A stretch of 64,000 bases of DNA from Schmidtea polychroa (GCA_044892525.1 CM097886.1:121334001-121398000), one strand, 5' to 3'; shown: positions 27,147-45,614, counted from the stretch's first letter. Notes: a model not told the origin generated them from the letters alone. Translations and numbers: made by a program.

Positions 27147-28553
27147 CTACTCGGTTCTGCTCTTTCCCTCCTTCCTCACTGTCATCTTGATATATACGGT
27201 ATCATTTCTCGCCATATCCTCTATCTTTTGTTGTAAAATGAATGTAGGTGCTCCTGTTGCTGCTCCTTCTTCTTCAAGGGGTCTTTGGTTGGCTAGTTGA
27301 TTTCCCGTGGTCTTGAAACTTTGTTCGTGGATACTTTGGTCATTCATTATTGGGATATCGATTTTTGCCTGGAACGGCCATTCTATTATTTCGTCGTGCT
27401 CCCCTTTACATACTAAGAAGAAGATCGAAAAGTGTGTATCCAACCCGGTTCCATCTCCGTTAGGATATATCTTCATTTTCATTTTGTATCCGTTCTTCCA
27501 TGAGAGGAATGCGGGACTGGTTATTCTGGTATCTTCTCCGATTTTTGCTCTTCGTATCTTTTCTTTCACTCCCGTAATTTTCCATATGTAAGGTGCGGTT
27601 GGTAGTATTTCGTTGAGATTTATCTCGGTTATTTTTTGATGTAGCACCTTGGCTTGCTCATTACTGATTTCCATTCGATTAATTTGCATTTTTATGTTTG
27701 CTCGAGCTTGTTCGAAAGCCTCTTTTTCTTCTAGTAGTTCTTTTACTAATGCCTTCAGTGAGGTTATTTCTATCTCCATTTGTTGCACTTTCTCTTCACT
27801 TTCTTGTAACGCAGTTGACCACATCTCTGCGTGAGTTATTACATTTTCTGTTAAGTGGTGTGGCAAGTCTCCTCGGTGCAGTAATTTCTGACATCCCCAT
27901 TTGCCTAGTACACATATCATTCTTTTCCTTTCGCATTCTTTTAGATGCTGGGCTATTTTTATTATTCCCCCTTTGTTGCATTCGTTCGGGCATTCACCAC
28001 AGAATTCTGCACATACCTTTTCCTCCTGGATATTGTGATGTTTGATGGTGAGATTTTTCCAAGTGTCTATTTCTCCGCAATATTCACATCTTTCCAACCT
28101 TTCCTCGCACTGGCTTTGATGTTCCTTTTCTTCGTTAGCTTGAATTAATTTCTGGCATCGCTCACACTGGCTGACTTTGTACATACATTCCCCCAGATGT
28201 TGTTTCACTTTCCATATTGATCCTTTCCATTCACATGGGGTATTTTTACATCCTAGATTAGTGTTCAACATGTCCTTTACTGCGGCTTTATCTTCATTAG
28301 TATCTTCTAAACTGGATATCAGTGTCTCTTTACATATCGGACACCACTGTGGTCGGTTTTTTATTGTTTCTTTTATACATTCTTTGCACACTCTGCATCC
28401 GCATTGGGTTTGATGGGGTTCCTTTAATAGCTTTTCACATATTCCACACGTGACATGTTTGTGTATTCTGATTGCTGCGGAATTTCTGACTAACTCGATA
28501 ATTTCGTTAAACTCCTCTCTTCGTTGCTTATCCATGTCTACAATTATATACAT
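27147..28553 (-). CDS. Intronless full-length TRAF-family protein carried by the retroelement
   Basis: RING CGIC...QCGCRVC...CPIC; several TRAF zinc fingers; coiled coil; MATH YIWKI...NGYKM..KIYPNGDG...THFSIFF...IEWPF. Confidence 0.92.
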   Translation of the reverse strand: MYIIVDMDKQRREEFNEIIELVRNSAAIRIHKHVTCGICEKLLKEPHQTQCGCRVCKECIKETIKNRPQWCPICKETLISSLEDTNEDKAAVKDMLNTNLGCKNTPCEWKGSIWKVKQHLGECMYKVSQCERCQKLIQANEEKEHQSQCEERLERCEYCGEIDTWKNLTIKHHNIQEEKVCAEFCGECPNECNKGGIIKIAQHLKECERKRMICVLGKWGCQKLLHRGDLPHHLTENVITHAEMWSTALQESEEKVQQMEIEITSLKALVKELLEEKEAFEQARANIKMQINRMEISNEQAKVLHQKITEINLNEILPTAPYIWKITGVKEKIRRAKIGEDTRITSPAFLSWKNGYKMKMKIYPNGDGTGLDTHFSIFFLVCKGEHDEIIEWPFQAKIDIPIMNDQSIHEQSFKTTGNQLANQRPLEEEGAATGAPTFILQQKIEDMARNDTVYIKMTVRKEGKSRTE

Positions 28554-29139: not shown

Positions 29140-30702
29140 TTATATTTGTGGATTTGGAGGGCACTGCATATTCCAGGCCTCCATCCACCGTTCTTGGCTC
29201 ATTTTACTGGGCCTTTTTACTTGTTGTTGAAGATTTCTGGCTCTGATCATTTCGAGTTTGTTACGCTGTTGTTTATCTCGGATTATTTTTATCGTTCCCC
29301 CCGTTATAGTTATGAACGCTCCGGTTATTATTATTCCGCTGATCCATATCATCTGCTTTACGCTGATGATCTCTGGGTTTTCATTGTTTATCACTGTACT
29401 CGTTGTTTCCGCATTTCTTTCTTTCTCTGTTTGGCTTTTCCCTTTCTCCAGCCCTCGTATTCTTGTTATTTCCTCATTGATCCCTTCTTTTGCCATTTTT
29501 TGTATTTTTTCCATTTCCTCTTCTGATACGTAATTATCTTGGTTTTTCTCATCGGTCTTCTGGCGTTTTCCTTCCTCGTCTTCTCCGTCATTGATCTTTC
29601 TTTTCTTTCCCCTTTTCCCAGGATATCGTCGGCATTCCTTTTCTGGTCTTTTTCTCACGATACAGACCGTGTATTCCTTTGGCGGTTGTTGTTGTGTTAC
29701 GTATTGTAAACAGTCTTCGCCTGGTCCTAGCCTTGAAATACATACTTTGTGTTCTTTCCTTGGTTGGAGTTGTGTTATCACTACTTCACCTCCTTTACCT
29801 AGGTGCACCTCTTTCCATTTAACTTTCGTTATTCTCTTCCCGTTTCGGTGTTGGTATGCTTCTTGTATTCCCACTTCCGTTATCGGTTCTGTGTCCTCGT
29901 TCATCAACACTAATCTCCGATATGCTCTAGACATGCATCTCCCCAGTATACACCTTTCCTTTAAATCCCACTCCTCCTTCAGGTCCCATTGTTGCTCTTG
30001 CCCTTGCTTTTTCTTTTTTTGCTTTAGCTCCTCCTCTTTGTTGTCGTGGTTCTCCGCTTCTTTAGTCTCTTTTAACGTTCTCGTCTCTCCATGGGCTGTT
30101 ACTAACTCTATCATGGTTAGGACAATTATCATTAGTATCATATTTGTTTCTATTTCTTTGTTGGTGAAAGGTAGGCATACCCTCTGTTTTCCATTATTCG
30201 GTTTTTCCTCCTCTTTCATCTTGTTTCCCGGGTTGTTTCCGTCCTTTCCCGTACCTGGGTCTTTGTTTTCCGGGTTATTCTCTTCCGGTTTTCTTTTCTC
30301 TTTATCCTCTTTTCGACCCTTTCCGTCATTATCATCGAATTTATCTCCCCCACTGTCGTTTAAAATGTCGTCCTCGACATTTATATCGTTTAATAATCTT
30401 CGGTATGCTGTTAGTACTCTGTTTCTTGCTAGTTTAGCCTCGAATTCGAACTCTTTTCTCCCGGTTGCTGCGTGTCTTTTCCGGTTCCATTCCTTTACTA
30501 GTTCTCTCAGTTGGATACGGCGGTGTTTTCCAATTCGTTGTTGTTCGTTTTGGTTTTTCGTGAATCTCAGGTCTTCTCTATTCAATACAATTAGTATGAT
30601 TTTAGGTGTCCCCCCTTTAGTTAATGTATTTTTGATCATTGCGTTTTCACCGTTCTCATAAAATTCGTTTACGTTAATCGCGTATTTATTACTTTGCGGC
30701 AC
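29140..30702 (-). CDS. Terminal polyprotein segment: ankyrin-like start, internal signal-like segment, FN3-like motif, TM helix
   Basis: In frame with the upstream ORF across a single TAG; MILMIIVLTMIELVTAHG; ITQLQPRKEHKVCI; MIWISGIIITGAFITITGG. Confidence 0.65.
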   Translation of the reverse strand: MPQSNKYAINVNEFYENGENAMIKNTLTKGGTPKIILIVLNREDLRFTKNQNEQQRIGKHRRIQLRELVKEWNRKRHAATGRKEFEFEAKLARNRVLTAYRRLLNDINVEDDILNDSGGDKFDDNDGKGRKEDKEKRKPEENNPENKDPGTGKDGNNPGNKMKEEEKPNNGKQRVCLPFTNKEIETNMILMIIVLTMIELVTAHGETRTLKETKEAENHDNKEEELKQKKKKQGQEQQWDLKEEWDLKERCILGRCMSRAYRRLVLMNEDTEPITEVGIQEAYQHRNGKRITKVKWKEVHLGKGGEVVITQLQPRKEHKVCISRLGPGEDCLQYVTQQQPPKEYTVCIVRKRPEKECRRYPGKRGKKRKINDGEDEEGKRQKTDEKNQDNYVSEEEMEKIQKMAKEGINEEITRIRGLEKGKSQTEKERNAETTSTVINNENPEIISVKQMIWISGIIITGAFITITGGTIKIIRDKQQRNKLEMIRARNLQQQVKRPSKMSQERWMEAWNMQCPPNPQI

Positions 30703-30705
30703 TCT

Positions 30706-31257
30706 CTATGTTAATAATAATTTCATGGCTTCTAGATTTTCCCGTACCGTATTCCACTGAAAATGAGATGTGTTTTTGCAAATATTTTCAACTTCTTCCT
30801 TTGTCGCATTTTTGCATATGAACCTGATCATTTCTAGGTTCGGCTGTATGGTTGCCCAGTCCATTGTGGAGTTTCCTTCGGTTGACTTTTCATCTAGTCT
30901 TGATCCTGATTGATGTAGTATATGGAGTGTTTTTGGGTGTATTTTCGTTATAGCTGCATACATCATGGCGGTTTCGCCTTGTTCGTTTTTCGTGTTGGTT
31001 TCCTCGCCCAAATCTCTGAGGATTCTTATTATCGTTATTGCTCGGTTTTCCTTTGCTGCTAATATTGTTTGATCCCTTGCGTATGTGTGTACGGTCTTTA
31101 TTTTTTTAGCCAATATCATTTCGTCTGATAACTCTAGCATTTCCTCAAAGAATACTTCTTTCGCTTTGCGTATTATTGTTTCTTGATCTAAATTTCTTGG
31201 TTTCGTTTTGATGACGTTATTCGCTGCAATTTGATTCGTTTGCGACTTCGGTTCTTT
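30706..31257 (-). CDS. Ankyrin-repeat segment, in-frame continuation of pol after a single TGA
   Basis: EQGETAMMYAA, TEGNSTMDWAT; 39 open codons link the TGA at 31258-31260 to the ATG at 31140. Confidence 0.75.
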   Translation of the reverse strand, partial: KEPKSQTNQIAANNVIKTKPRNLDQETIIRKAKEVFFEEMLELSDEMILAKKIKTVHTYARDQTILAAKENRAITIIRILRDLGEETNTKNEQGETAMMYAAITKIHPKTLHILHQSGSRLDEKSTEGNSTMDWATIQPNLEMIRFICKNATKEEVENICKNTSHFQWNTVRENLEAMKLLLT

Positions 31258-34080
31258 TCACACCCCTTTCTTTATTCTTGTTTTCTTTCCGGTTGAATTA
31301 TTGATTCGTTCTTCTGCTGTAAGTACTTGAATAATATCTAAGTAATTCTCGCGAATGTTGTTCATTGTGTCCATCATATATAATACACTTACCGTTTCCC
31401 AATATTTATTTCGTGCTTGGTTAATGAATTGGAATATTGATTTTTCGAATGTGTCAATTCGCTTTTTTAATAACTGCTCATCTTTATGATTTGTGAATTC
31501 TATCCCTCGTTCTATCAATTGTTTTGGGATTTCGAATAAATGATGCCCTTTCATGGCTTCTCTCATAAGCGTGTTTTCTCCTCTCGTGAATGCTTCGTTT
31601 ACGTTGATCATGTAGTCATTTTTGATTGGATTTCTCCATGTAATTAATATTCCGGTAATTGTTGTCAGTTTTTCTTTGATTGCTGTTAATAGGCCGTCAT
31701 GCATGTTTCCGACTTCTCGATTATCCTCATATGCTAGTAGTTCCATCAACGTCGTAAATGCTTCGGAACTTTTCCCTTCAATTGCATGATGCAGTGCGTT
31801 TTTCTGATTTCGATCTTGTGTGGTTATCTTTGATCCGGTGTCAAGTAATGCGATTATAATGTCTTTTGTTTTGCCTCTGTTCGCCGCTATCATTAATGGT
31901 GTGTAACCTTGGTTGTTTTCTTGTTCTGTTGATCTCTTGCAGTCGTGAAATGCTTCTATTGTTTCTAGTATTTGTTCGTTGTTACCTACTTTCATGAGTT
32001 TATGTAATGGTGTGTCTCCATAATGATCTGTTATGGTAAATAATATTGGCCATTGACTTTTAACTACTCGTAGCAACGGATGTGTCCTCTCTCTGTTTGC
32101 ATAGTTTTCGATCATAGTCAGTAGACCTCCTAATATTTCGAAGTCTAGTCTATCTTTCGCCCATCCGGGTATTTTAATTTTTACCTCTTTTACGATCTTT
32201 TCAGCTTCCGATGGTTGGATACCTAATCGTCCAGTCGTTGGTTCTGCGAGTTGCTGCATCATGTTCATTCTGTAGGTTTGCGAACGTGTAGTTAACGTAC
32301 GGCCTTCTGGTTGACTGGTGGCTGTTTTTGGGATTGGTTTACATCGTGCCACATTTACGTATATTGGCCTGGTGAACGGGTTATTTACCAATTTTACTCT
32401 TACGTTCGTTTCTCCCACAAATAAGATCTCATATGGTCCCTTTCCGTTCCGTCGCAACTTTTTAGTGGTTCCTGGAATCAGTTCTGGTGTTTCTATCATT
32501 ACCCAATCACCTGTTTGAAAAGTATGTTGCTTCACGTTTTTCTTTCGATCGTGCAATTCTTTATAACTTTCCTGGTAGAACTTGATGTTTAATCCCGCAG
32601 TTTCCCAAATTTCCTGCATTCTTTCCTTGAATTTTGTGACATAATCGTCTATCTCCATATATTGCGATATTGGTGGTTGATATTCTAGGTCCATTGGCAT
32701 GTTACATTCTCTTCCGTACATTAATTTAAATGGGCTCATTTTCGTTGATGCATGAATTGACATTCTATAAGCCATAAGGCATAGGTTTATATATTCGTCC
32801 CAATCTCGTTGGTGACGGTCGACGTAATTTGACAACATTTGGATAAGTGTTCCGTTAAATCTTTCTGTCATCCCGTTGGTTTGAGGGTGATACGGTGATG
32901 TTCTCAACTTTGCGATTTTGAAGTAATTGGTTACCTCGCTCATGATCTCACTCATGAAATTTGTGCCTTGATCCGTTAGTATTTGCTTCGGCGTTCCATA
33001 TCGGCAACATATGTCTTCTACTAAGATTTTCGCGATTGTTTTAGCTTTTTGATCTGGTATAGCGAATGCCTCTGGGAATTTTGTGAGGTAATCCGTAATT
33101 ACCAAAATATAAATATTTCCTTTATCCGATTCGGGTAATGGACCAACTACGTCCATTGATATCATTGTCATTGGTTCTATTGGTACCGGCATTGGCGTTA
33201 AAGGTGCTTTCCATTTCGATCCAGTGTTTTTCCTTGTTGCACAGGTTAGGCAATTTTTCACCCATTCCGTTACGTCTTCTGTTAGGGTGGGCCAGAAACA
33301 TTTCTGTTTCATTCTCGCTAACGTCTTTTTTGATGACATGTGTCCTCCCAATCTTCCGTCGTGATATTGCGTTAGTAGCTCTTTTCGTCTGTTTTCCGGT
33401 ATGCACATTAATCGCTTTTCTCCATCCATTATTAGTAACCAATCTTTCTCGATAATGTATCGGTGTCGATGTTTATCCATATGTTCTTTTAATTTTTGGT
33501 CTTTCCCATACACTTCGGTTTTTCCGGTTTTTACATAATCGATAATCTGTTTCAGTTCTGGGTCTTCTTGTTGGTCCTTTCGCAGTTGGCAAAAATCCAA
33601 ATCTTCCGCTACTATTAAGCATATGCGTTGCATTTCTGAATCTACCAAATCTGGAAAAATAGACCTCGACATACAATCGGCGTTGGCGTTTGCTCTTCCT
33701 GCTTTGAATTTTATAAATGGAGAGTATTCTTGCAATTGCATGGCCCATCTCATTAGTCTACTTGACGCTTCTTTATGTTGCCCTAACCACACCAATGGTT
33801 GATGATCTGTGGTTATGCATATCTCATGTCCCCATAGTAAATATCGGAAGTGTTTGATGGCTTGTATTATGGCCAGTGCTTCTCTTTCGGTTACCGAATA
33901 GTTTTTCTCATGCTTTTTGAACGTTCGACTGTAATATCCGATGACTCTCTCTTTTCCTTCGTCATCCAGTTGCCCTAAAATCGCTCCTGCTGCATATCCG
34001 CTTGCGTCCGTTGCCGATAGAAATGGCTTCTTAAAATCTGGGTGTACGAGGATTGGTGCTTCAATCAATTTATCTCTCAA
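31258..34080 (-). CDS. pol: Pol 3' part: RNase H, integrase (HHCC, DDE, GPY/F) and ankyrin repeats
   Basis: ATDASG, TDHQPL, YHD...GH...CLTC, SMDVVGP, TDQGTNF, ERFNGTL, GKGPYEI, then GDTPLH, GYTPLMIAA, KNALHHAI. Confidence 0.95.
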   Translation of the reverse strand: MRDKLIEAPILVHPDFKKPFLSATDASGYAAGAILGQLDDEGKERVIGYYSRTFKKHEKNYSVTEREALAIIQAIKHFRYLLWGHEICITTDHQPLVWLGQHKEASSRLMRWAMQLQEYSPFIKFKAGRANANADCMSRSIFPDLVDSEMQRICLIVAEDLDFCQLRKDQQEDPELKQIIDYVKTGKTEVYGKDQKLKEHMDKHRHRYIIEKDWLLIMDGEKRLMCIPENRRKELLTQYHDGRLGGHMSSKKTLARMKQKCFWPTLTEDVTEWVKNCLTCATRKNTGSKWKAPLTPMPVPIEPMTMISMDVVGPLPESDKGNIYILVITDYLTKFPEAFAIPDQKAKTIAKILVEDICCRYGTPKQILTDQGTNFMSEIMSEVTNYFKIAKLRTSPYHPQTNGMTERFNGTLIQMLSNYVDRHQRDWDEYINLCLMAYRMSIHASTKMSPFKLMYGRECNMPMDLEYQPPISQYMEIDDYVTKFKERMQEIWETAGLNIKFYQESYKELHDRKKNVKQHTFQTGDWVMIETPELIPGTTKKLRRNGKGPYEILFVGETNVRVKLVNNPFTRPIYVNVARCKPIPKTATSQPEGRTLTTRSQTYRMNMMQQLAEPTTGRLGIQPSEAEKIVKEVKIKIPGWAKDRLDFEILGGLLTMIENYANRERTHPLLRVVKSQWPILFTITDHYGDTPLHKLMKVGNNEQILETIEAFHDCKRSTEQENNQGYTPLMIAANRGKTKDIIIALLDTGSKITTQDRNQKNALHHAIEGKSSEAFTTLMELLAYEDNREVGNMHDGLLTAIKEKLTTITGILITWRNPIKNDYMINVNEAFTRGENTLMREAMKGHHLFEIPKQLIERGIEFTNHKDEQLLKKRIDTFEKSIFQFINQARNKYWETVSVLYMMDTMNNIRENYLDIIQVLTAEERINNSTGKKTRIKKGV

Positions 34081-37000
34081 CGTTTCGAATGCCTCCTGTT
34101 GTTCTTTTCCCCCAAGTGAACGAGATATCTTTTTTCACTAACTCTTGGATTGGTTTTGCAATTCCTGCATAATTTTTGATGAATTTTCGATAGTATCCAC
34201 ATAATCCTAGGAACTCTTGCACTTGCGTAACGGTTTTTGGTGCTGGACATGTTTTTATTTTTTCGATGTTTCTTGGATCTGACTCTTTTCCTTTGGCTGA
34301 CACTATGTGTCCTAAAAACGTGACTTTTTCTTTTGCCCAATCACATTTTGAAGGTTTGAGCTTGAGTTTCCATTGTCGCAATCGAATGAATACATTTCGG
34401 ATATCCTCCAGATGTTGTTCAAATGTTGCTGAATAGATTAGCAAATCATCAATATATACCATACATTGTTTGATTCCATGAGTGACAAAGTTCATGCACC
34501 TTTGAAATGATGCTGGAGCGTTGGTCAGTCCGAATGGCATTTTCCTGAACTGATATAGATCTCGTCCCAACGTGAAAGCGGTCTTCTCTTTGTCCTCATC
34601 TTTGACTTTAATCTGCCAGTATCCACTTTTTAAATCTAAAGAAGTAAAATATGCTGCCTCCTGCAACATGAGTAACATTTCATTAATGTCTGGCAGTGGG
34701 TAGGTATCCCTCTTGGTTACTGCGTTTAACTTTCGATAATCGATACAGAATCTTTGCGTGCCATCTTTCTTTTTCACCATGACCACTGGAAACTGCCAAG
34801 GTGAGCAACTTGGTTCGATTACTTTTGCATCTAGCATTTTTTGCACTTCTGCTTCGGCTATTTCTTTTTGCATCTCCGCTAGTTTGTATGGTCTTAATGT
34901 GATTGGAGTTTCATCTATCAGGGGGATTGCATGTAGGGTAACATCACATGTACCCAAGTCTAAATCCGAAATGGCAAATATATCTTTGTATTCTACTAAT
35001 AATCGGGGCAATTTTGTCTTTTCGGCATCTGTTAGCAACGTGCTATCTATGGTCCATAATGCGTCGTCTTTGGTTCTTTCGTTGGTCACTTTTGGTAGTT
35101 CTATATCCATCATTGGAGTCAATTTTCCCAATCTTTCATTTTCGTAAATGATTTTGTCTTCCTCTTCGAAATTCGTGATGTTGATCGGTATCACTCCTTC
35201 TTGGTTTATTGTTATTATTTCTCTAGCGAGCGGTAATTCTCGTCGCTTTTCGAATGACTTACTTGGTTCGAAAATAACTTCCCCTTCCATTCCCGTATCC
35301 ACCTTTATCTGACAGATCATCTGTGATTTTGCTGGTACGATTATTTTTTCTGGACATCTGATTACTGCATTCATTTTGCATATTCTGCCGGTTTTATCCT
35401 TTAAGCACATTGTTTGTAAGTCAATTACTACTTCTTTTAGTAGTTCTGGCATTAAATCTGTTCCGATTATGCATGGTACACTCAGTTGTGGTATCACCGC
35501 TAAATACGTTTCAATCTCGTTATCCTGGTATTTCAAGGTGGTCCACCATCTCCCGACCACGTCTACTGTTTCTTTACTGCATGCTATGATGTGGATTGTT
35601 GTTGACTCGATATCTTTCCAATACCTACTGGGAATTTGATTATTTGCTATTGCTGATACGTTAGCTCCGGTGTCTATCATAGCATTTGTTTCTTTCCCAT
35701 TGATTTGAATCATGACTGTTACTGTCGGACCTCCAGGTAAAATCATGGCGGCTATCGACCGTACATCGTCCGCTTGATCTACACTTCTGGTTCTTCTAGT
35801 TGGCGGAAAATTCATTCCTGGTTGACTTGGTAACTGTGGATACATATTTTGTGTCATGGTCAAGGCTGCTTGTTGTCCGACGATGTCCGGTGGTATATAA
35901 CTTCCGTTGGCTATCCAGGTGTTTGTCTTATCCTTCTCCCAATATGGGGCTGTTTCTATTTGTTTTTCGTTCGGGTTTCTGCTTGGATATGGGTATTTAT
36001 TATTCCCTTCATCATCGTCATCGCTATCACTGTTAGATGATTGGTTTCTAAATCTATCGAAGAACTTTGGCTTACTCTTTTTCAATTGTCTTCTCGTTGC
36101 TTCATCATACATGGTTTTTCGGAATCGTCTACCTATTTCCTCGTCTGTCCCTTTAATCTTGGTTAAGATTTTAATCAATCGCTTTATTCGATGAATATCT
36201 TTCGAGTGACCATGTAATACCATAGTTTTTGCTAAAAATGGTAGAAACCCTACTATCATTTTCCAATTTACTTTCTTTTCTCTCTTGTAAATATCAAAAC
36301 AGGCTAGCATTTGTGTCAATATTACTCTAACAATTTGAATTATGAGTATGATTCCCAATATTCCTGCTATCATTTGTCCGAATACCAAGAATCTTCCCCA
36401 CATTGCTTTCATCATATTTGACGTGGCTTGTTGGAAATGGTCTGGTGATAATAGTAACTCGTAATTTGGACCTGATTGGAAATTTGTTCCGCCGGTTATT
36501 GTAACCATACTTGACAAGATTGACTCTCGCCTGGCTGGGAAAAGTATGTTTAGCCGTGCTGTTTCTAGATCCTCTGCTGAATACATACCTCCGTTTGATA
36601 CGTCTACGGGTTTGAAGTCTTGTTCCATGGCAAGTTCTATTAATCCAAACTTCTTAGGTTCCTCCACTGGGGCCTTTACTGGTAACATTATCCATTTTCC
36701 GTCGGGTCTTTCGTACAATGGTCCGTATGCATTGGAACAGTTAAAGAGATTTGGATAGAAACCCAATGGATTCATAATTCTGGTGATTAGTTGGACAAAT
36801 CGATTTTGTCCTTTGTAACGAATTTCCAACTCATTTGCACATTTCCCCGGTGGTATGGTGGGTTTTTCCGGCATTCGTGCAAACGTCTTGGTGCATGCAT
36901 ATGTATACATCACTTCGCCCACCATTCTACCAAAATGTCCGTCTGGTAATGGGAGTGATGACATCGTATTATCAGGGTGCGTTATCGCGATTGCTAGTTT

Positions 37001-38299
37001 TGTTTTCAGTATCTCTTTATTCAATGAACAATCGTTTTGTATAAGGTCGTAATATACTTTTTGTAGCGTCGTTTGTCCGCGATGGAATAAAAAATCCATT
37101 TTGTTATTGGCGTATAGGTACAATTTGACGTCCTCCATGGCTATCTTTCCCACTGCTCTATCTATTATCTGCCTTGACATGTAGATGCCTGCGTAGTTGG
37201 TCTTGTAGACGATACTGTCGCATTTGGTGGTCTCCTTCTCTCTGATGAATCTCATACCTAGGTCTGGATCGTCTGTGATCAGTGCCGTTGGTGTTTTTTG
37301 TGTTGTGAGCCTTTTTTCTTTGGGCGATGGTGGAACTGGTTTTCCATTTCGCATTCTTATTTTTTCATTTCCGTCCTCGTCAGCTTCGTTCTCATAAATT
37401 TCTCCTTTTACTTCATTGAATAGCGCACTTTTCAACAATTGGAGTCTGCATTTTTGGGTGTTAGCTTCATATATTATGGTCGAAACCCCCGTCTTACATA
37501 CGTTTTCCGAAGCTCTACATGCCGGGTTGGTTTTCATTTGGTAATTATTAGCGTCAAATTGTGCTTCGTATTCCTTTAACTCAACTGTATATGACTCGAT
37601 TACTACTACCCCCGATATCGCCTCTCCTCTGATCGTATACGTACCTCCGTTACATGTTCCATCCGTTGATTTTACGCGTCCGGCTACATAAATGCTTTCG
37701 GTTTTAATCATTCCACTTTGCCCGTGTATCGTTACTCCGTCTCGGATCCTCATTGCTCCGGTTCTAAACAGTTCTTTGCAATCCTCTCTTTGTATGGGTA
37801 CTATTTCTTTATCCAATCCGGGTAGTATGAGAGTTGAATATGAATATTGTCCGCAGTAATACGCCAACACACGTTTTGATACTACGCACTCCTTTGCTAG
37901 CGTCCTGATGAAATCCGATTCTTGATACACGTGATATGAGACCTTTTTGTTCACGATATCTAATTTATTTGGTGAAGCTTGTCTACATTCCTCGATATCT
38001 CCCAGTGAGTTTTTATCCCTCATTATGGAATTATTGCAGTCATAGATCGTGAAACCTGTTGCTCCACTGGTGCATAACATCCATATCATCATAGTCATCA
38101 TTAACGAGTTTATTGATGCTTTCCTGCTGGCTGGATCTTTCATTGGTAATTCCCATTCTAGTTCATTCAGCAACTTTTTTAATCTGACTTGCATTGATCT
38201 TTCCTGTTCGTTTTTTCGTGGCGCTTGGATGAGTCTCTTCCATCCTCCAGCACGGATAATATGTGGTTCGATAGTATTTTCTATGATTGCCACTGTCAT
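34070..38299 (-). CDS. pol: Polyprotein segment: end of Bcl-2-like domain, chuvirus-type glycoprotein (~38120-36300), aspartic protease, reverse transcriptase; +1 insertion at ~34105-34113
   Basis: GGW motif; signal-like segment then FTIYDC; Cys pattern and TM typical of chuvirus-type G; MIDTGA (~35670); YPLP, MPFGL, YIDD (34446-34457). Removing one base from GGGGGAAAA restores FTWGKEQQEAFETLRD. Confidence 0.92.
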   Translation of the reverse strand: MTVAIIENTIEPHIIRAGGWKRLIQAPRKNEQERSMQVRLKKLLNELEWELPMKDPASRKASINSLMMTMMIWMLCTSGATGFTIYDCNNSIMRDKNSLGDIEECRQASPNKLDIVNKKVSYHVYQESDFIRTLAKECVVSKRVLAYYCGQYSYSTLILPGLDKEIVPIQREDCKELFRTGAMRIRDGVTIHGQSGMIKTESIYVAGRVKSTDGTCNGGTYTIRGEAISGVVVIESYTVELKEYEAQFDANNYQMKTNPACRASENVCKTGVSTIIYEANTQKCRLQLLKSALFNEVKGEIYENEADEDGNEKIRMRNGKPVPPSPKEKRLTTQKTPTALITDDPDLGMRFIREKETTKCDSIVYKTNYAGIYMSRQIIDRAVGKIAMEDVKLYLYANNKMDFLFHRGQTTLQKVYYDLIQNDCSLNKEILKTKLAIAITHPDNTMSSLPLPDGHFGRMVGEVMYTYACTKTFARMPEKPTIPPGKCANELEIRYKGQNRFVQLITRIMNPLGFYPNLFNCSNAYGPLYERPDGKWIMLPVKAPVEEPKKFGLIELAMEQDFKPVDVSNGGMYSAEDLETARLNILFPARRESILSSMVTITGGTNFQSGPNYELLLSPDHFQQATSNMMKAMWGRFLVFGQMIAGILGIILIIQIVRVILTQMLACFDIYKREKKVNWKMIVGFLPFLAKTMVLHGHSKDIHRIKRLIKILTKIKGTDEEIGRRFRKTMYDEATRRQLKKSKPKFFDRFRNQSSNSDSDDDDEGNNKYPYPSRNPNEKQIETAPYWEKDKTNTWIANGSYIPPDIVGQQAALTMTQNMYPQLPSQPGMNFPPTRRTRSVDQADDVRSIAAMILPGGPTVTVMIQINGKETNAMIDTGANVSAIANNQIPSRYWKDIESTTIHIIACSKETVDVVGRWWTTLKYQDNEIETYLAVIPQLSVPCIIGTDLMPELLKEVVIDLQTMCLKDKTGRICKMNAVIRCPEKIIVPAKSQMICQIKVDTGMEGEVIFEPSKSFEKRRELPLAREIITINQEGVIPINITNFEEEDKIIYENERLGKLTPMMDIELPKVTNERTKDDALWTIDSTLLTDAEKTKLPRLLVEYKDIFAISDLDLGTCDVTLHAIPLIDETPITLRPYKLAEMQKEIAEAEVQKMLDAKVIEPSCSPWQFPVVMVKKKDGTQRFCIDYRKLNAVTKRDTYPLPDINEMLLMLQEAAYFTSLDLKSGYWQIKVKDEDKEKTAFTLGRDLYQFRKMPFGLTNAPASFQRCMNFVTHGIKQCMVYIDDLLIYSATFEQHLEDIRNVFIRLRQWKLKLKPSKCDWAKEKVTFLGHIVSAKGKESDPRNIEKIKTCPAPKTVTQVQEFLGLCGYYRKFIKNYAGIAKPIQELVKKDISFTWGKRTTGGIRNVER

Positions 38300-38317
38300 T
38301 TCTACGTGATTTGCAAA

Positions 38318-41086
38318 TTATTTATTGGGTATTTTCCTCGCAGCTAATCCCATCAAATTATACATCAAATAAGTTATTACCACTAGATGGTGTTCATCAT
38401 CGTTTGCGTTCGTTGTGAGTTGTTCGATTACTCTCCTTGTTTCATCCCAGTCCGTTTTAGTGGTTTTTGTTTTTTCTTTGATTAACTTTGGGATTATTCC
38501 TGATACGATGTGCCATAGTTGTCGAACTTCCACGCTTGCTACTTTCCGTTGCCACAAACGTCTGAGTTGCGGGTTTGTTATTATTAACATATCTTTTATT
38601 AATTCCCGTATCCACTTTTCTCCTCTCTCGATCGTTGGTTGGGCTTCTTTCAGATCCCATACTATTTTATCTAACATTTCCAATCTGACTTGTCCTTGTT
38701 CTTGCTTTAATTGTTCTCTGGTTTTAAATTCAGGTTTTTCTCCTTGTTTCTTGGGTCTCCCTTTTGCCCGTTTTTCCATTGTTGTTCCGGCTTCTCTGGT
38801 ATTTTCGTAACTCGGATTTCTTTCATTATCTGTTCTGGGCAATGAGCTGTCATTATTTCTTAGCCATTCATTCCATTTGTCTATTATTTTATCGGTTTGA
38901 CCTTCCGGAGTTATTCTTGTCGGTTCTCTTTGTTTCTTGAATTGTTCATCCGTTTCCGTTTCTGTCGTATTGTCGATGATTTCTTCGATATTTAGTTTCT
39001 CCGGTTGTTGATAACTCGTCGACGGTCTGCTGGTTGTCCAAATCTCGGCTCCCGTCGGCCATCTCACTAATAGCGGCGATCTTTCCCCAGGTTCATCGTC
39101 ACTATCTTCTAGGATAATCTCCTCGACCTCCTCGGTTTCATTCGATTTACTTGGTGCTTTGTTCGGACTTGGGGTGCTCAAACTACCTTTTGTTGGTTTA
39201 CCATTTTTACTTTTCCTTTTTAACGGTTTCCCCAACGTTTCTGCCATTGTCAATACGTTTGTCTCTTCCAACCTCATAGGTGTTATTCCTACGTCCGCAT
39301 TATCATCTAATGATTTTCCTTGCAGCTGTAGATGGAATGGGGTTTCGTACGCCAATTTCTTTTTTAATTCTCTGATTTTTGTGGTTGGATGTACCTCTAC
39401 TTCCTCAACGTTTTTATCAGGGTATTTAATTCGAATTCGATATCTTTCTTGGGTGTCCTCTGACCATTCATGGTTTCGCCACTTCCCGATAATTTGCTCC
39501 AATTGTTCCGGGTACCATTCGTTGTATTGTCGGTATTCCTCTATAACTTTTACTATCTCTCTCAAATAGTGGATATTATCCGATATTTTTAGAATGAAGT
39601 TGGCCAGTGCTATCACTTGCCTTTTTTGATTCTTTGTTCCCGTCTCTAAGATATCGCCTAGTTGCTTATATCTCTCTTTCTCTTCTCGATCTCTCGCTTC
39701 CTTCGCCTCCTCACCGTCTATATCGGCATATTCACGTTCCTTTTTCCTCATCGCATGGATATGTCTGGCTTCATTTTCACTTTCTGATGTGACGTCCGTC
39801 TCGCTCTCGTCATCTGATGTCTGTTCCATTGCTTCCTCTTCATATTCTGGAGGTTCATCTTCTTCCTCCTCTGGCTCTTCATCCGTCTCCTCGATTTCTG
39901 TTTCTATGAAGATTCCTTTCTTGATTTCCCATTCCTTCTTTTCCGCGTTCCACACTCTTTCCCATGGGGTTCGTCTACAGGATCTGGTACTTAGTTTCGT
40001 TATTTTTCCTTGTAGTTCCTTTTCTTTTAACCATTGTTGGTGGATTTCAATTATTTCTACGGATTTCTGATATAACGTCTTCATCCGATCTCGTATCTCC
40101 TTTTGATAGGTTACATCCCTCGTTCGGAATTCATCCATTGGTACTATTCTGATTATTTGGTGATCAACCCACATGCCCATTTCACTTAATGAGGTGTCGT
40201 CTTCAGTTCGTAGTATTATTTTATCGTACATCATGACTATATCGTCTATCATACCATCGTCACTCTCGCTTCGTACTCTTTCCGTTATCTCTTGGTTTAT
40301 CCTTTCTACTAATTCGTCTACCGTGCTTTGATTACTGATTTTGATTCGTCGTTTTTCCTCATTTGGCAACCATATCGTTACTTCCAATTTTCTTGGTTGC
40401 GTTTCTTTTAACCGTCCATATTTGTGGATTAAATTGACGGTTCTCCAATCACTCATCCTGAGGAGTTCCGTATCGCGTAATCTGCTCATTAACTCGTGCA
40501 TCTCGGGGGCTCGTCTGGCTATGAGTAAATCCCAATTATCATCTACTTGTTCTTGAATTTGTTTGATGAGCTTGTCTAGGTTTCGTTTCAAAGTACATTG
40601 TTTTATTTGTTCCAATTTCAGTTTGATGTTAAAATCATATTCGGCCTTAGCGTCTTTAGCCCAATCATAGATATTGGCTGGTTGTTTCTCTTTGTGCAGC
40701 TTTAATATTTGGGTTTCTCCTGGCCATACCAGTGCGTCTACCAAGTGCATATCTGGTTTGATTTGCTCTCCTTGATATTGGTACAGGTACTCCTTTTTCC
40801 TCGAGCTACCTAAATGTTCTCGTATCCAATCGAAAAGTTCGTCGGTGACGGTATTTTTAACCCATATTCTTTCAAGTCCTTTACTTGTTCCGATTTTTAT
40901 TACATATCGCGTGGTATCGGCCTGCTTCATTTTTTCCATATACTTTTTTATTATCGACTTTTCCTCGTTTGGTATTAAATCTTTCTCGTTTCTTTCCAAT
41001 TTCATCACTTTCTGTACGAATCGTCTAAATGGTATTACATCGATGAACTCTTGGTTTCTCACTACCACTGGGAGTATTTCGGCTAC
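38318..41086 (-). CDS. Polyprotein segment with three ubiquitin-like domains, an acidic linker and the N-terminal part of a Bcl-2-like domain
   Basis: In frame with gag (single TGA) and with the next ORF (single TAA); UBL-like segments ~40910-40700, 40390-40140 and 39445-39245. Confidence 0.7.
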   Translation of the reverse strand, partial: VAEILPVVVRNQEFIDVIPFRRFVQKVMKLERNEKDLIPNEEKSIIKKYMEKMKQADTTRYVIKIGTSKGLERIWVKNTVTDELFDWIREHLGSSRKKEYLYQYQGEQIKPDMHLVDALVWPGETQILKLHKEKQPANIYDWAKDAKAEYDFNIKLKLEQIKQCTLKRNLDKLIKQIQEQVDDNWDLLIARRAPEMHELMSRLRDTELLRMSDWRTVNLIHKYGRLKETQPRKLEVTIWLPNEEKRRIKISNQSTVDELVERINQEITERVRSESDDGMIDDIVMMYDKIILRTEDDTSLSEMGMWVDHQIIRIVPMDEFRTRDVTYQKEIRDRMKTLYQKSVEIIEIHQQWLKEKELQGKITKLSTRSCRRTPWERVWNAEKKEWEIKKGIFIETEIEETDEEPEEEEDEPPEYEEEAMEQTSDDESETDVTSESENEARHIHAMRKKEREYADIDGEEAKEARDREEKERYKQLGDILETGTKNQKRQVIALANFILKISDNIHYLREIVKVIEEYRQYNEWYPEQLEQIIGKWRNHEWSEDTQERYRIRIKYPDKNVEEVEVHPTTKIRELKKKLAYETPFHLQLQGKSLDDNADVGITPMRLEETNVLTMAETLGKPLKRKSKNGKPTKGSLSTPSPNKAPSKSNETEEVEEIILEDSDDEPGERSPLLVRWPTGAEIWTTSRPSTSYQQPEKLNIEEIIDNTTETETDEQFKKQREPTRITPEGQTDKIIDKWNEWLRNNDSSLPRTDNERNPSYENTREAGTTMEKRAKGRPKKQGEKPEFKTREQLKQEQGQVRLEMLDKIVWDLKEAQPTIERGEKWIRELIKDMLIITNPQLRRLWQRKVASVEVRQLWHIVSGIIPKLIKEKTKTTKTDWDETRRVIEQLTTNANDDEHHLVVITYLMYNLMGLAARKIPNK

Positions 41087-43370
41087 TCATTTTATCGCTT
41101 CCTCTCTTTCTTTTCTCAATTGTATTTCGATATCCTCGTCCTCACTTTCGCTGGTTATCTCGCTTTCGCTTTCGCTTTCCTCTTTGGTTTCCCCTTTTGA
41201 CGGTTCGCCATCTTCGTTCAGCTGTAGTATTTCTCCCCCCAAACTGCTCACATAGTCTTCATCTGATGACGACGTACCTTTTGTCTCTTTCATCATGTTG
41301 ATTCGCAAATTACTCATCCTTGGTACTCGCTTTAGTTTCTTATTTTCGAATATCGTTGTTTCTTCGAATTCTAATTCTTGTAGTATTTTGTGGTTTAGGT
41401 GACTGGTTTGTTCCTGGTCTTTTTTACTATCATCTTTTGCCTCAGTTTTCGTTTTGTCATGTTCCTTTTCGATTTTGTCTTTTATCTTTTTCCAGAATAT
41501 TCTCTGAATTCTTTGGTTTCCTTTCAGTATCGTTGTTGGACCTTCCGTTCCGTTTTCTGTTGTTGTTTCTTTTACTTTTTCCGGTTCAGCCATCGGCACT
41601 ATTCTTGGGTTTTTCCCATAGTTGTAACAATATTGCTCTTTAACGTCCCTTATTAATCTCATCATATTTAGTCGTAAGGGTTGCCCTTGTCGTTGCTGGT
41701 CGCGTTCTTGTTTTATTCTCTCTTCTTCGGCCTGCAACCTTTGCCAATCCTGTGCATGTTGCTGTCTCTCGTAGTTGTTGATGTTTTCGGTGCTTCTCAT
41801 CATCCGTATATTCTGTGTTTGCTGAGGCGCCGGTTCCGGTCTTGGTCGCAGTAATTGATGCATCATCTGTTTCATTTGGGAGATTTCTTGCATGACGTTC
41901 ATTTGTTTCCCTTCACTGGGGTTACTTTGTCGTTGCGGATTCGACATATAATTATTATTCCGTTGTGGCGGTCGTTGTTGTTGGCCTCTTTCTCGGCATT
42001 CCCTAGATATATGGCCTGGTTGTCCGCAGTTAAAACATCCTCTCGTTTGGCATATATTCTCCGTATGCCCCCGTCGTCCGCAACGATTGCAATTTGCATT
42101 TCTATAACAATCTCTGTCCCAATGTCCTGATTTACCACAGGTTAGGCATTGTTTGTTGTCGTTCCCATTTCGTCGATTATTAAAATTATTCCCGTTATTT
42201 GGGTGGTTACGTTCGTTGTTATTCCCATTTGATCGTCCTTGTGGTGGTTTGAAAATTTGATGCGCTCCGGGTATGAATTGATTCATTTTTGGTTCTTGGT
42301 TATTGATATCTCCACCATCTGTTTTTACCATGGCTGTTGCTATCCTCCCATCCTCTTGCATAATATTCATTTGAGCTGGGAGGTGGAGCTCGCATCGTGT
42401 GGCCCAATCTATGGCCTCTTCCAACGTTTTACACATTTGGCATCCCACCGATGCTCTTACTTCTTCTCGGCGTAGTCCCTCTATGAAATAGCCGATCAAA
42501 TTTTCCTCTGGCAATTTCCCATTCATTGCTTTCTTTGCTAATCTCCGTAATTCACTTGCATATAATGTTATTGATTCATTGGTTCTCTGTTTTCTATTGG
42601 CTAGTTCGCCGAGTGCTTGATTTATTGGCTTGCTCGCTCCGAAAGTTTTCTTCAGAAATGTTTTGATATCTTCCCATTTATCTAATTTCGTGTCTCTCTC
42701 TTTAGCTTCTAAGTACACTTCCAATGCACTATCACATAAAAACAACGGCATTCTTTTGCTAACCGCTTCGGCTGTCCATCCACACACCGTGATATAGACC
42801 TCAAAGTTGGTTATAAACGTTGTCAATTTGTTTGCATTTCCGTTGAACAGTTCGCCTCTAAAGTTTTCTTTATACTCGTCGGTTTTTACCACATTCGTCA
42901 TGATTGGTTCTCGAGTTTCCACTGTTTCTTTTAAGTTATCTAATAACTGGGTTAGGTTATGGACGGATAGTTCTTCTGTGGATGCTGATAAACTGTTCGT
43001 GATATCTATTATACTTTCTCGGCTTTTCGCTCGCTTCGGGGTAAATTGGATTGTTGGGTTTTCTTTGTCGTCTATCAATATTCTGTTCGTCTCGTTAGGT
43101 CCTTGCGATGATCCTCTCCTGTGACGGGTTGATCTAGCTCTCTTGATGCTTTGCAGCTGATCTACTGAAAATAACGTATCGTATTGATTACTTGAGGATC
43201 GGAGTGTTCTTTGATTTGCCGTGACTTCTTCCTGTTACTCCTTTGTCTTTCCTTGGCTCCTTTCCGTTTGATCGGGTTCTGGATTGGTTATTTCTGGTTG
43301 GTTGTTGGTTTCTTCGAATTCCTTTTGCGCAGGTTCTGGATTGGCTTGCTTGACTGGATTGGTTGGATAT
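41087..43370 (-). CDS. gag: Gag (capsid-like domain and three CCHC knuckles); frame open from 43370 with one TAA at 43235-43237
   Basis: CLTCGKSGHWDRDC, CNRCGRRGHTENIC, CFNCGQPGHISREC; capsid-like FNGNANKLTTFITNFE...RKQRTNESITLYASELRRLA. Confidence 0.9.
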
Positions 43371-45071: not shown

Positions 45072-45614
45072 TCATTCACCATAATAAACCATATGAGTTT
45101 CCTTTATCTCATACTTGCATATCGTACATCGTTTCAACTCGTTCACGCATTCTTCACAGTGACTGAGGTGTCCACAAGGCAAGAACAGTACGCGAATAGG
45201 GCGAAGTTTGCAACACAGACAGGATCGTAATCTAGTGACTTTTTCCTGGATCTTTTGTTCGATTATGTCGGTTATAGTATCTAATTGATCTCGTATTCGA
45301 TGATATTCTAGATTTAATGCAGGGTGTCTCAATCTTTCCTGATACCACTGATATATGGTTTCGTGATTTACTTTACCATCTGTACGACTTAGGCCTATGG
45401 CTAGTAATATATGGTTAGGTACGACTGGTGCTTGTCCCATTGTTTGTAGTTGTATGCTCTTAATTCTCTCTCTTTTGTGTATGAGTGTTTTTATAGGGTC
45501 GTTTTCTATATCGATGAAGTTGATTAATTGTTGAATCTGTTCTGCGAATTCCTTCATGTCTATTGGGAAAAGAAAATATCTTAATAGTATACAACTAATT
45601 AATGGTTGTTTCAT
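45072..45614 (-). CDS. IAP/Mdm2-type C-terminal RING protein between the PBS and gag
   Basis: CLCCKLRPIRVLFLPCGHLSHCEECVNELKRCTICKYEIKETHMVYY at the extreme C-terminus; no BIR recognised; ATG at 45614 or 45557; AATAAA at 44946-44951. Confidence 0.85.
   Translation of the reverse strand: MKQPLISCILLRYFLFPIDMKEFAEQIQQLINFIDIENDPIKTLIHKRERIKSIQLQTMGQAPVVPNHILLAIGLSRTDGKVNHETIYQWYQERLRHPALNLEYHRIRDQLDTITDIIEQKIQEKVTRLRSCLCCKLRPIRVLFLPCGHLSHCEECVNELKRCTICKYEIKETHMVYYGE

What the first reader, a model, noticed from the sequence alone, without database searches (positions are those of the whole stretch)
36300..38120. Chuvirus-type fusion glycoprotein fused in frame upstream of the protease: Gag-Env-Pol order
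Seen: a hydrophobic signal ending ATG|FTIYDC; motifs C......YYCG, DC..LF.TG, DGTC.G..Y, YANNKMDF, DC.L...IL...LAIA, GEV.Y...C, C.NEL, GGMYSAEDL...ILFP; TM WGRFLVFGQMIAGILGIILII; then, with no stop, a cytoplasmic linker into DTG protease and RT. Established: this motif series matches Jingchuvirales (chuvirus) class III glycoproteins as I recall them, and these have been reported captured by BEL/Pao elements. Env genes normally lie downstream of integrase. Inference: a gypsy element with an RNA-virus envelope inside its polyprotein, Pol initially tethered to the glycoprotein tail and processed by signalase plus its own protease. This is an organisation I do not know from described retroelements.
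Basis: partly seen in the sequence, partly recalled or inferred. Interest (0 to 1): 0.95.

Follow-up and report, generated by a model that had tools for sequence, protein, structure and literature searches.

The report
Giant flatworm-type retroelement with in-frame envelope
The window holds a 29-kb gypsy-type endogenous retrovirus whose chuvirus-like fusion glycoprotein sits in frame between gag and protease.

Summary
On the minus strand, 36329-38101 encodes a signal peptide, a 551-residue ectodomain and a transmembrane helix. These run without a stop into a retropepsin and a reverse transcriptase.

- **Glycoprotein type:** it matches Pfam PF24664 (Monjiviricetes fusion glycoprotein) at E 1.9e-68. 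Its nearest named relatives are chuvirus glycoproteins. A confident AlphaFold model (pLDDT 85) matches herpesvirus gB and chu-like virus glycoproteins, so it has the class III fold.
- **Not a private insertion:** eleven relatives, 28-47% identical in this segment, carry the glycoprotein and Pol domains in one uninterrupted ORF. Seven of them run through to integrase.
- **The element:** a 29.3-kb Ty3/gypsy element (20348-49648) with 3.76-kb LTRs that are 99.7% identical and a 4-bp target duplication. It also carries RING, ubiquitin-like, ankyrin and TRAF/MATH genes.
- **Novelty claim fails:** Arkhipova and Yushenova (2019) described exactly this layout for planarian Burro/GYPSM1 elements and called it the first in-frame env between gag and pol. 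Later papers report the Gag-Env-Pol order in nematodes, bryozoans and flatworms.
- **State of this copy:** its roughly 4,650-codon polyprotein is interrupted by four in-frame stops and one frameshift.

The proposed processing (internal signal peptide, stop-transfer helix, then protease cleavage) is plausible but untested.

The parts
20344..20347 (.). Target-site duplication (4 bp), left copy
   Evidence: The same four bases flank both ends of the element.
20348..24102 (-). 3' LTR (3.76 kb, TG...CA termini)
   Evidence: blastn of the window against itself gives 3,760 aligned bases at 99.7% identity, with 9 mismatches and 2 gaps. The termini were read.
24359..26857 (-). Three accessory ORFs (206, 236 and 319 aa), charged and coiled-coil-like, with no Pfam family
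27147..28553 (-). Intact TRAF-like accessory gene (RING plus MATH/TRAF-C domain, 468 aa)
   Evidence: Pfam TRAF-mep_MATH at E 1.5e-23 and zf-C3HC4. It is only 25-32% identical to the TRAF-like host gene in the left flank.
29140..43078 (-). Gag-spacer-Env-PR-RT-RH-IN-ankyrin polyprotein coding region, about 4,650 codons, given as one broken gene. It is interrupted by 4 in-frame stops and 1 frameshift.
   Evidence: Two reading frames of 3,003 and 1,647 codons each hold only 2 internal stops. In six relatives the RT and RNase H parts lie in one continuous ORF.
42467..42748 (-). Gag capsid-like domain (Retrotrans_gag)
   Evidence: Pfam PF03732, E 3.4e-10.
41996..42148 (-). Three CCHC zinc knuckles (nucleocapsid)
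   Evidence: Pfam zf-CCHC; pattern count.
39347..39439 (-). Weak ubiquitin/SUMO-like match in the 916-residue spacer between Gag and the glycoprotein. A second weak beta-grasp match lies at 40277-40408.
   Evidence: PF11976 Rad60-SLD, E 1.8e-4 and 21.7 bits, which is below the 23.8-bit cut-off.
38054..38101 (-). Signal-peptide-like hydrophobic stretch of the glycoprotein (internal if the polyprotein is read as one)
   Evidence: Hydropathy and position. All relatives have an equivalent stretch.
36401..38053 (-). Class III fusion glycoprotein ectodomain, chuvirus-like
   Evidence: PF24664 at E 1.9e-68. AF2 model pLDDT 85.4. Foldseek matches gB at E 3e-14 and chu-like glycoproteins at E 1e-41. 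All 14 ectodomain cysteines are conserved in at least 93% of 61 sequences.
36329..36400 (-). Transmembrane (stop-transfer) helix
   Evidence: The only hydropathy peak above 1.6 over 19 residues in the 1,409-codon stretch. Net charge is +4 after it and 0 before it.
35717..36328 (-). Basic cytoplasmic tail and linker joining the glycoprotein to the protease (204 residues, no stop)
   Evidence: No Pfam family matched.
35441..35716 (-). Retropepsin (aspartic protease)
   Evidence: Pfam RVP, E 1.7e-10.
34301..34777 (-). Reverse transcriptase
   Evidence: Pfam RVT_1, E 8.2e-36.
33724..34038 (-). RNase H
   Evidence: Pfam RT_RNaseH, E 3.7e-38.
32884..33402 (-). Integrase (H2C2 zinc domain plus catalytic core)
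   Evidence: Pfam Integrase_H2C2 at E 1.2e-20 and rve at E 2.8e-13.
30805..31980 (-). Ankyrin-repeat region downstream of the integrase
   Evidence: Pfam Ank_2 at E 1.9e-14 and 9.3e-8.
45072..45617 (-). Accessory ORF upstream of gag with a C-terminal RING finger (zf-C3HC4_3)
   Evidence: Pfam E 4.1e-10. No BIR domain was found in this region.
45867..45885 (-). Candidate primer-binding site, starting TGG seven bases after the 5' LTR
   Evidence: Read from the sequence. This is inference only, because no tRNA was available to match it against.
45893..49648 (-). 5' LTR
49649..49652 (.). Target-site duplication, right copy

Best explanation
The segment is the envelope gene of a giant (29.3 kb) Ty3/gypsy endogenous retrovirus of the Burro type described from planarians.

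**Origin.** An ancestor of this lineage holds a class III fusion glycoprotein of the chuvirus (Jingchuvirales) kind placed between gag and the protease, in the same reading frame as Pol. The direction of transfer between virus and retroelement is not resolved here.

**Most likely mechanism (inferred, about 50-55% confidence).**
1. The genomic RNA is translated as a Gag-spacer-Env-Pol polyprotein.
2. The hydrophobic stretch just before the mature glycoprotein acts as an internal signal sequence. It takes the ribosome to the ER and is cut by signal peptidase.
3. The ectodomain is translocated and folds with seven disulfides.
4. The transmembrane helix stops transfer, so protease, RT, RNase H and integrase are made on the cytosolic face, tethered to the glycoprotein tail.
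5. The retropepsin then releases them.

This topology resembles a flavivirus-style polyprotein rather than the spliced env mRNA of retroviruses.

**This copy.** It is a recent insertion (LTRs 99.7% identical) but is not intact. Its polyprotein region carries four in-frame stops and one frameshift.

**What is shown:** domain identities, the fold, the in-frame continuity, conservation of the layout in relatives, and the LTR and target-duplication structure.
**What is inferred:** the topology, the cleavage steps and the host group.
For: **Glycoprotein identity and fold**
- PF24664 at 231 bits.
- Chuvirus glycoproteins are the nearest named relatives.
- AF2 pLDDT 85.4, matching gB and chu-like glycoproteins at TM 0.56-0.65.
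- 14 of 14 ectodomain cysteines are conserved.

**Element**
- 3.76-kb LTRs with TG..CA termini and a 4-bp target duplication.
- Gag with three CCHC knuckles, then PR-RT-RH-IN in that order.
- The integrase-region homologues that carry a name are annotated as gypsy or 17.6 Pol.

**The fusion is a family trait**
- Eleven relatives have the glycoprotein and downstream Pol domains in one ORF: P0001-P0005, P0012, P0015, P0017, P0151, P0286 and P0289.
- They are 28-47% identical to the window in this segment. They come from ENA and JGI metagenome assemblies (three loci read) and one NCBI record.
- The retroelement-borne glycoproteins form one clade apart from the standalone chuvirus-like ones.

**Topology**
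- Every relative has a hydrophobic stretch just before the projected mature N-terminus, 150 to 1,360 residues into its ORF, and a transmembrane helix after the ectodomain.
- Net charge is +2 to +7 after the helix and 0 to +2 before it, in all 12 proteins.

**Literature**
- PMC6431247 section 7 describes the same layout in Burro/GYPSM1, with MATH_TRAF, SUMO-like (PF11976), ankyrin and RING-type motifs.
- PMC11410931 reports more than 70% A/T and Burro elements over 30 kb in Schmidtea. The window flanks are 70.4% A+T.
Against: - No Burro or GYPSM1 sequence was available, so the assignment rests on architecture and composition, not on alignment.
- The host could not be identified.
- BCL2-like, BIR and dUTPase motifs reported for Burro1 were not detected. 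MATH/TRAF is a separate downstream gene here, not part of the polyprotein.
- Nothing here shows expression, signal cleavage or protease processing.
- This copy has five interruptions, so it cannot itself make the full polyprotein.
- A spliced env mRNA cannot be excluded from DNA alone.
- The metagenome relatives are single contigs of unknown host, and some are themselves split into several ORFs.
Confidence: 0.8

Rival explanations
1. The glycoprotein is expressed mainly from a spliced subgenomic mRNA, as in retroviruses. On this reading the in-frame continuity with Pol is tolerated rather than used: Gag-Pol would be made from another transcript or by bypassing the glycoprotein.
For: - In the window, and in five relatives (P0001, P0002, P0004, P0006, P0151), the ORF holding the glycoprotein opens only 82-209 residues upstream of the mature N-terminus.
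- In L001 and L005 gag is a separate ORF just upstream. An acceptor site there could therefore give an mRNA starting near the glycoprotein.
Against: - None of the eleven relatives, at 28-47% identity, has a stop between the transmembrane tail and the protease. Over that divergence this implies selection for continuity.
- Pol has no other entry point, because the protease lies only downstream of the glycoprotein.
- No splice evidence is available.
Confidence: 0.2
2. The glycoprotein no longer serves cell entry. On this reading it is retained as a membrane anchor that takes Pol and assembly to internal membranes of an element that spreads only within cells.
For: - Burro-type elements behave as very abundant genomic repeats (PMC6431247, PMC8532177).
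- Tethering Pol to a membrane protein would in any case localise it.
Against: The whole ectodomain is conserved, not just the anchor. All 14 cysteines are kept, the class III fold is predicted with confidence, and the ectodomain is retained in full over 28-47% divergence.
Confidence: 0.12
3. The glycoprotein segment is a private nested insertion of an endogenous chuvirus fragment into one gypsy copy, or an assembly chimera.
For: Chuvirus-derived glycoprotein insertions are common in invertebrate genomes (PMC7642597, PMC10084718).
Against: - Eleven divergent relatives have the glycoprotein at the same place and in frame.
- The retroelement-borne glycoproteins form their own clade.
- The segment lies in a 3,003-codon frame that has only two internal stops.
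Confidence: 0.01

Closest known systems
Burro / GYPSM1 giant gypsy-like LTR retrotransposons of planarians (Schmidtea mediterranea, Dugesia/Girardia tigrina): Jurka 2007; Grohme et al. 2018; Arkhipova and Yushenova 2019 (PMC6431247)
   Same: - Total length near 30 kb with a 21-25 kb internal region.
- Gag with retrotrans_gag and three CCHC knuckles.
- An env related to mononegavirus-type fusion glycoproteins, in frame between gag and PR.
- PR-RT-RH-IN order.
- Ankyrin, MATH_TRAF, SUMO-like (PF11976), RING-type and coiled-coil extras.
- A polyprotein of about 4,650-5,140 residues.
- An A/T-rich host genome.
   Different: - MATH/TRAF is a separate downstream gene here. In Burro1 it lies inside the polyprotein, and in the D. 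tigrina element it is in an upstream ORF.
- No BCL2-like, BIR or dUTPase match was found.
- The polyprotein of this copy is interrupted five times.
- Sequence identity to Burro-1 to -4 could not be measured.
GAG-ENV-POL Ty3/gypsy 'errantiviruses' with gB-type ENV in Nematoda, Bryozoa and Platyhelminthes (Sacco et al. 2022, J Gen Virol 103:1739; Chary and Hayashi, eLife 2026, PMC13524379)
   Same: A gypsy Pol, a class III (gB-type) envelope, and the envelope gene placed between gag and pol.
   Different: - Those elements were searched for within a size limit of at most 10 kb and are described as ORFs in that order. The eLife text never mentions an in-frame fusion (0 occurrences).
- This element is three times larger and carries many accessory genes.
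- The Sacco paper could not be read here.
Mosquito BEL/Pao elements with a captured Chuviridae glycoprotein (Dezordi et al. 2020, PMC7642597)
   Same: A chuvirus-type glycoprotein carried by an LTR retroelement.
   Different: That backbone is BEL/Pao with env downstream of pol as a separate ORF. Here the backbone is Ty3/gypsy, with env upstream of PR and fused to it.
Flavivirus/pestivirus-type polyprotein topogenesis (a likeness of mechanism only, from general knowledge)
   Same: Internal signal and stop-transfer segments would place the glycoprotein in the ER lumen and the enzymes in the cytosol. Host signal peptidase and a viral protease would then share the cleavages.
   Different: The two are unrelated in sequence and replication. 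The likeness is inferred from hydropathy and charge only.

Membership tests
Ty3/gypsy (Metaviridae) LTR retroelement | Long terminal repeats with TG...CA ends and a 4-6 bp target duplication | tested here: met
   LTRs of 3.76 kb at 99.7% identity, and a 4-bp duplication.
Ty3/gypsy (Metaviridae) LTR retroelement | Pol order PR-RT-RNase H-IN with RVT_1-type RT, and no BEL/Pao or copia signatures | tested here: met
   RVP, RVT_1, RT_RNaseH, Integrase_H2C2 and rve occur in that order, with no Peptidase_A17 or RVT_2. Named homologues are gypsy or 17.6 Pol.
Monjiviricetes / chuvirus-type class III fusion glycoprotein (PF24664) | Profile match above the curated cut-off | tested here: met
   231.4 bits against a cut-off of 27, E 1.9e-68.
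Monjiviricetes / chuvirus-type class III fusion glycoprotein (PF24664) | Class III fusion fold | tested here: met
   The AF2 model has pLDDT 85.4. Herpesvirus gB post-fusion structures are the top PDB matches at E 3e-14 and probability 1.0. Chu-related virus glycoproteins match at E 1.7e-41 with TM 0.62. A sequence-only search of the PDB found nothing.
Monjiviricetes / chuvirus-type class III fusion glycoprotein (PF24664) | Type I layout: N-terminal signal, ectodomain with conserved disulfide cysteines, single C-terminal transmembrane helix | tested here: met
   Hydropathy. 14 of 14 cysteines are conserved in at least 93% of 61 sequences. No dedicated signal-peptide predictor was available.
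Monjiviricetes / chuvirus-type class III fusion glycoprotein (PF24664) | Membrane-fusion activity | not testable with these tools
   No functional data. The functional test is outside what this report may propose.
Burro / GYPSM1 giant planarian gypsy-like elements | Giant size (internal region up to 25 kb, total about 30 kb) | tested here: met
   The internal region is 21.8 kb and the total is 29.3 kb, against the description in PMC6431247.
Burro / GYPSM1 giant planarian gypsy-like elements | env in frame between gag and pol | tested here: met
   PMC6431247 calls this the first such case.
Burro / GYPSM1 giant planarian gypsy-like elements | Extra domains: MATH_TRAF_C, ankyrin, SUMO-like, BCL2-like, BIR/RING, Smc-like, dUTPase | tested here: inconclusive
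   - Found: MATH/TRAF, ankyrin and RING, and coiled-coil ORFs.
- Found only below the Pfam cut-off: SUMO-like.
- Not found: BCL2-like, BIR and dUTPase.
- The AF2 model of the spacer's C-terminal part was too poor to use, at pLDDT 42.6.
Burro / GYPSM1 giant planarian gypsy-like elements | Sequence similarity to Burro-1 to -4 / GYPSM1 | not testable with these tools
   No Repbase or planarian repeat library is on hand. The closest proteins in the searched collections are unnamed metagenome ORFs at no more than 50% identity.
Burro / GYPSM1 giant planarian gypsy-like elements | Host is a dugesiid planarian | not testable with these tools
   The flanks are 70.4% A+T, which fits the figure of more than 70% A/T for Schmidtea (PMC11410931). 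Exact look-ups and a host-gene search returned no named organism.
BEL/Pao element with captured chuvirus glycoprotein | BEL/Pao-type Pol with env downstream of pol | tested here: not met
   The Pol is gypsy-type and env lies upstream of PR.

The most novel reading that the evidence does not exclude
This copy may belong to a Burro-like lineage that is not among the catalogued families. The whole clade, including the divergent metagenome relatives, may make Gag, envelope and Pol from one polyprotein by co-translational ER insertion through an internal signal sequence. That would leave Pol first tethered to the glycoprotein tail. Such a topogenesis has not been demonstrated for any reverse-transcribing element.
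Probability: 0.35. Interest if true: 0.55.

Novelty: already known. Interest (0 to 1): 0.3.

Why it matters
Placing an RNA-virus fusion glycoprotein inside the Gag-Pol polyprotein is a rare way for a retroelement to become virus-like. It raises a real question of membrane topology and stoichiometry that nobody has tested.

The layout itself is already in the literature for planarian Burro elements (2019), and the gene order is reported for nematode, bryozoan and flatworm elements (2022, 2026). This window therefore adds a well-annotated example and supporting detail rather than a discovery. The supporting detail is:
- a confident class III model of the glycoprotein;
- chuviruses as its nearest named relatives;
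- 14 conserved ectodomain cysteines;
- eleven divergent relatives that keep the fusion;
- a conserved internal hydrophobic stretch, transmembrane helix and charge pattern.

Tried and rejected
- **Sequence-only PDB search** with the glycoprotein: no hit. The fold had to be tested through a model.
- **Word-indexed homologue search** for fused-length relatives: nothing. The full HMMER scan found them.
- **Exact look-ups** of window proteins in public assemblies: none on record.
- **Host-gene search** with the flanking histone-fold protein: one unnamed hit at 79% identity. The host remains unidentified.
- **Single-sequence AF2** of the C-terminal part of the Gag-glycoprotein spacer, to test for a BCL2-like bundle: pLDDT 42.6, unusable, so no fold search was run on it.
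- **Permissive Pfam scans** for BCL2, dUTPase and BIR: nothing.
- **Spacer and accessory ORFs against the polyproteins of relatives:** no convincing similarity.
- **Troyka superfamily** (PMC12440569): rejected, because it has CG..CG termini and 3-bp duplications, whereas this element has TG..CA termini and a 4-bp duplication.
- **Capture of the neighbouring host TRAF gene:** rejected, at only 25-32% identity.
- **Papers not held:** Sacco et al. 2022 and Grohme et al. 2018.

Full report
**1. Observation.**
The long ORFs of this region are on the minus strand. The finding's coordinates fall in a 1,409-codon open stretch.

The hydropathy scan places:
- a signal-like stretch at 38054-38101;
- the ectodomain at 36401-38053, with 14 cysteines;
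- the only strong transmembrane peak at 36329-36400.

No stop follows. A basic 204-residue tail and linker (35717-36328) leads into a retropepsin (35441-35716) and an RVT_1 reverse transcriptase (34301-34777).

**2. What the segment is.**
- Pfam gives PF24664 "Monjiviricetes_fusion, viral fusion glycoprotein" at 231 bits against a cut-off of 27 (E 1.9e-68).
- A full HMMER scan of 1.84 billion representatives gave 938 hits. The standalone hits of 620-700 residues, at 21-26% identity, include glycoproteins of Tacheng tick virus 4, Yichun mivirus and Chuviridae sp., and a beetle genomic copy.
- A sequence-only PDB search found nothing.
- An AlphaFold2 model built on a 61-sequence alignment is confident, with mean pLDDT 85.4.
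- Foldseek puts post-fusion herpesvirus gB first in the PDB (E 3e-14, probability 1.0, about 650 aligned columns).
- Foldseek puts chu-related virus glycoproteins first in BFVD (E 1.7e-41 to 4e-36, TM 0.56-0.65).
- All 14 ectodomain cysteines are conserved in at least 93% of the 61 aligned sequences.

"Chuvirus-type class III glycoprotein" is therefore supported by sequence and by fold.

**3. The element around it.**
- Two 3.76-kb direct repeats (20348-24102 and 45893-49648) are 99.7% identical. They begin TG and end CA, and are flanked by a 4-bp duplication.
- The element is thus 29.3 kb long with a 21.8-kb interior.
- Reading the minus strand from the 5' LTR, the order is:
  1. a RING-finger ORF;
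  2. Gag (Retrotrans_gag plus three CCHC knuckles);
  3. a 916-residue spacer with only weak ubiquitin/SUMO-like matches;
  4. the glycoprotein;
  5. PR, RT, RNase H and integrase;
  6. ankyrin repeats, then a further 520 residues with one hydrophobic peak;
  7. an intact TRAF-like gene (RING plus MATH);
  8. three coiled-coil-like ORFs.
- The Pol order, the Pfam families and the named homologues make it Ty3/gypsy, not BEL/Pao.

**4. Is the fusion private?**
No. The best hits of the glycoprotein are long single ORFs called on ENA and JGI metagenome assemblies (three loci read) and one NCBI record.
- **Through to integrase:** Pfam shows glycoprotein-PR-RT-RH-IN in P0002, P0005, P0017 and P0151. 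P0012 has the same run but no detected protease domain. For P0286 and P0289 the precomputed domain lists give the same order.
- **As far as the protease:** P0001, P0004 and P0015 have glycoprotein-PR. P0003 has a CCHC knuckle, then glycoprotein-PR.
- **Colinearity:** the window's glycoprotein-PR-RT stretch and its RH-IN stretch align colinearly to one continuous ORF in six relatives.
- **Divergence:** these glycoproteins are 28-47% identical to the window's. Among those placed in the alignment, the median pairwise identity is 39%, and they form one clade apart from the standalone chuvirus-like set in a neighbour-joining tree.
- **Size and extras:** the relatives are also large and carry other accessory genes, RNase_T and RING.

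**5. State of this copy.**
- The coding region from Gag to beyond the ankyrin repeats (29140-43078) is about 4,650 codons in two frames.
- It is interrupted by four in-frame stops and one frameshift (counts).
- The relatives have RT and RNase H in one frame.
- From the LTR divergence, about 20 substitutions and about 1.2 new stops would be expected since insertion. Some interruptions may therefore predate the insertion or be programmed. One copy cannot tell.
- The accessory TRAF-like gene and the glycoprotein segment themselves are open.

**6. How it most likely works (inferred).**
- Every relative has a hydrophobic stretch ending shortly before the projected mature N-terminus of the glycoprotein. 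That stretch lies 150 to 1,360 residues inside the ORF. Each also has a transmembrane helix after the ectodomain.
- Net charge is +2 to +7 in the 40 residues after the helix and 0 to +2 before it, in all 12 proteins.
- This fits an internal signal sequence cut by signal peptidase, a lumenal ectodomain, a stop-transfer helix, and cytosolic PR-RT-RH-IN tethered to the tail until the retropepsin frees them.
- The main rival is a spliced envelope mRNA. It is disfavoured because none of the eleven divergent relatives has a stop between tail and protease, and because Pol has no other entry point.

**7. Comparison with what is known.**
- **Arkhipova and Yushenova 2019 (PMC6431247, section 7).** They describe the giant gypsy-like Burro/GYPSM1 elements of Schmidtea mediterranea and Dugesia tigrina:
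  - internal region up to 25 kb and total length over 30 kb;
  - a polyprotein of 4,873-5,140 residues;
  - Gag with two or three CCHC knuckles;
  - MATH_TRAF_C, SUMO-like PF11976, BCL2-like, ankyrin and BIR motifs;
  - an env region with hits to mononegavirus fusion glycoproteins between BCL2 and PR.

- **Expression of Burro1.** It is expressed and is upregulated when the PIWI protein SMEDWI-2 is knocked down. A Burro4 copy is shown as piRNA-targeted (PMC8532177).
- **Chary and Hayashi 2026 (PMC13524379).** They report the GAG-ENV-POL order with gB-type ENV in Nematoda (citing Sacco et al. 2022), Bryozoa and Platyhelminthes.
- **Fit to the Burro description.** The window's element fits in size, layout and most extras, and its flanks are 70.4% A+T, like Schmidtea (PMC11410931).
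- **Differences.** MATH/TRAF is a separate downstream gene, and no BCL2-like, BIR or dUTPase match was found.
- **Limits.** I could not align the element to a Burro sequence or name the host.

**8. Verdict.**
- I rate the finding as already known. At most it is a further member of the Burro kind. Interest is modest.
- The polyprotein topology remains untested in the literature I could read.

**9. Declared slip.**
My first notebook entry, and my early working, list the bounds of the ORFs as the ORF listing printed them. That was before I recognised that several of those bounds coincide with interruptions of one polyprotein gene. I stopped listing them after that, deleted nothing, and give only counts and outer bounds here.

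Noticed in passing
window 1-9006: A near-perfect inverted repeat: arms 1-3529 and 5477-9006 are 99-100% complementary with 1,947 nt between them. Each arm carries a TRAF-like gene (RING/TRAF zinc-finger exon plus MATH exon) and a hAT-dimerisation ORF. It is either a very recent inverted duplication or an assembly palindrome artefact.
   Followed up: partly
window 13536-14618: A TBP-like ORF (PF00352, E 2.8e-12) lies next to an ORF with a weak Pox_A32 packaging-ATPase match (E 0.004). This may be a remnant of a Polinton/Maverick-like or other DNA-virus-like element.
   Followed up: no
window 20902-21651 and 46447-47196 (minus strand, inside both LTRs): Each 3.76-kb LTR holds a 249-residue ATG-started ORF in the element's orientation, kept open in both copies with two residue differences and no Pfam family. 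A 269-residue ORF overlaps it on the other strand. Whether it codes for anything is unknown.
   Followed up: no
window 27147-28553 versus 1594-2988: The element carries its own intact TRAF-like gene and has inserted about 17 kb from host TRAF-like genes. The two are only 25-32% identical, so this is not a recent capture from this locus.
   Followed up: yes
P0005 (NCBI HBK71150.1) and P0165 (MGL4337186.1): Eukaryotic retroelement polyproteins of this family are deposited as proteins of bacterial MAGs (Flavobacteriaceae, Turicibacter). These are evidently mis-binned animal contigs.
   Followed up: no
L001, L002, L005 (ENA ERZ25039515): Relatives from one metagenome assembly carry an RNase_T-type exonuclease gene, and L001 also a RING gene, downstream of integrase. 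The window's element has ankyrin, TRAF and coiled-coil genes there instead. The accessory gene sets therefore turn over between lineages while the glycoprotein-Pol core is kept.
   Followed up: partly
window 54141-55044 and 57206-58285: The right flank holds further transposon remnants (a zinc-knuckle/protease-like ORF pair and hAT dimerisation ORFs). There is also an assembly gap at 58377-58504, which was left untouched.
   Followed up: no
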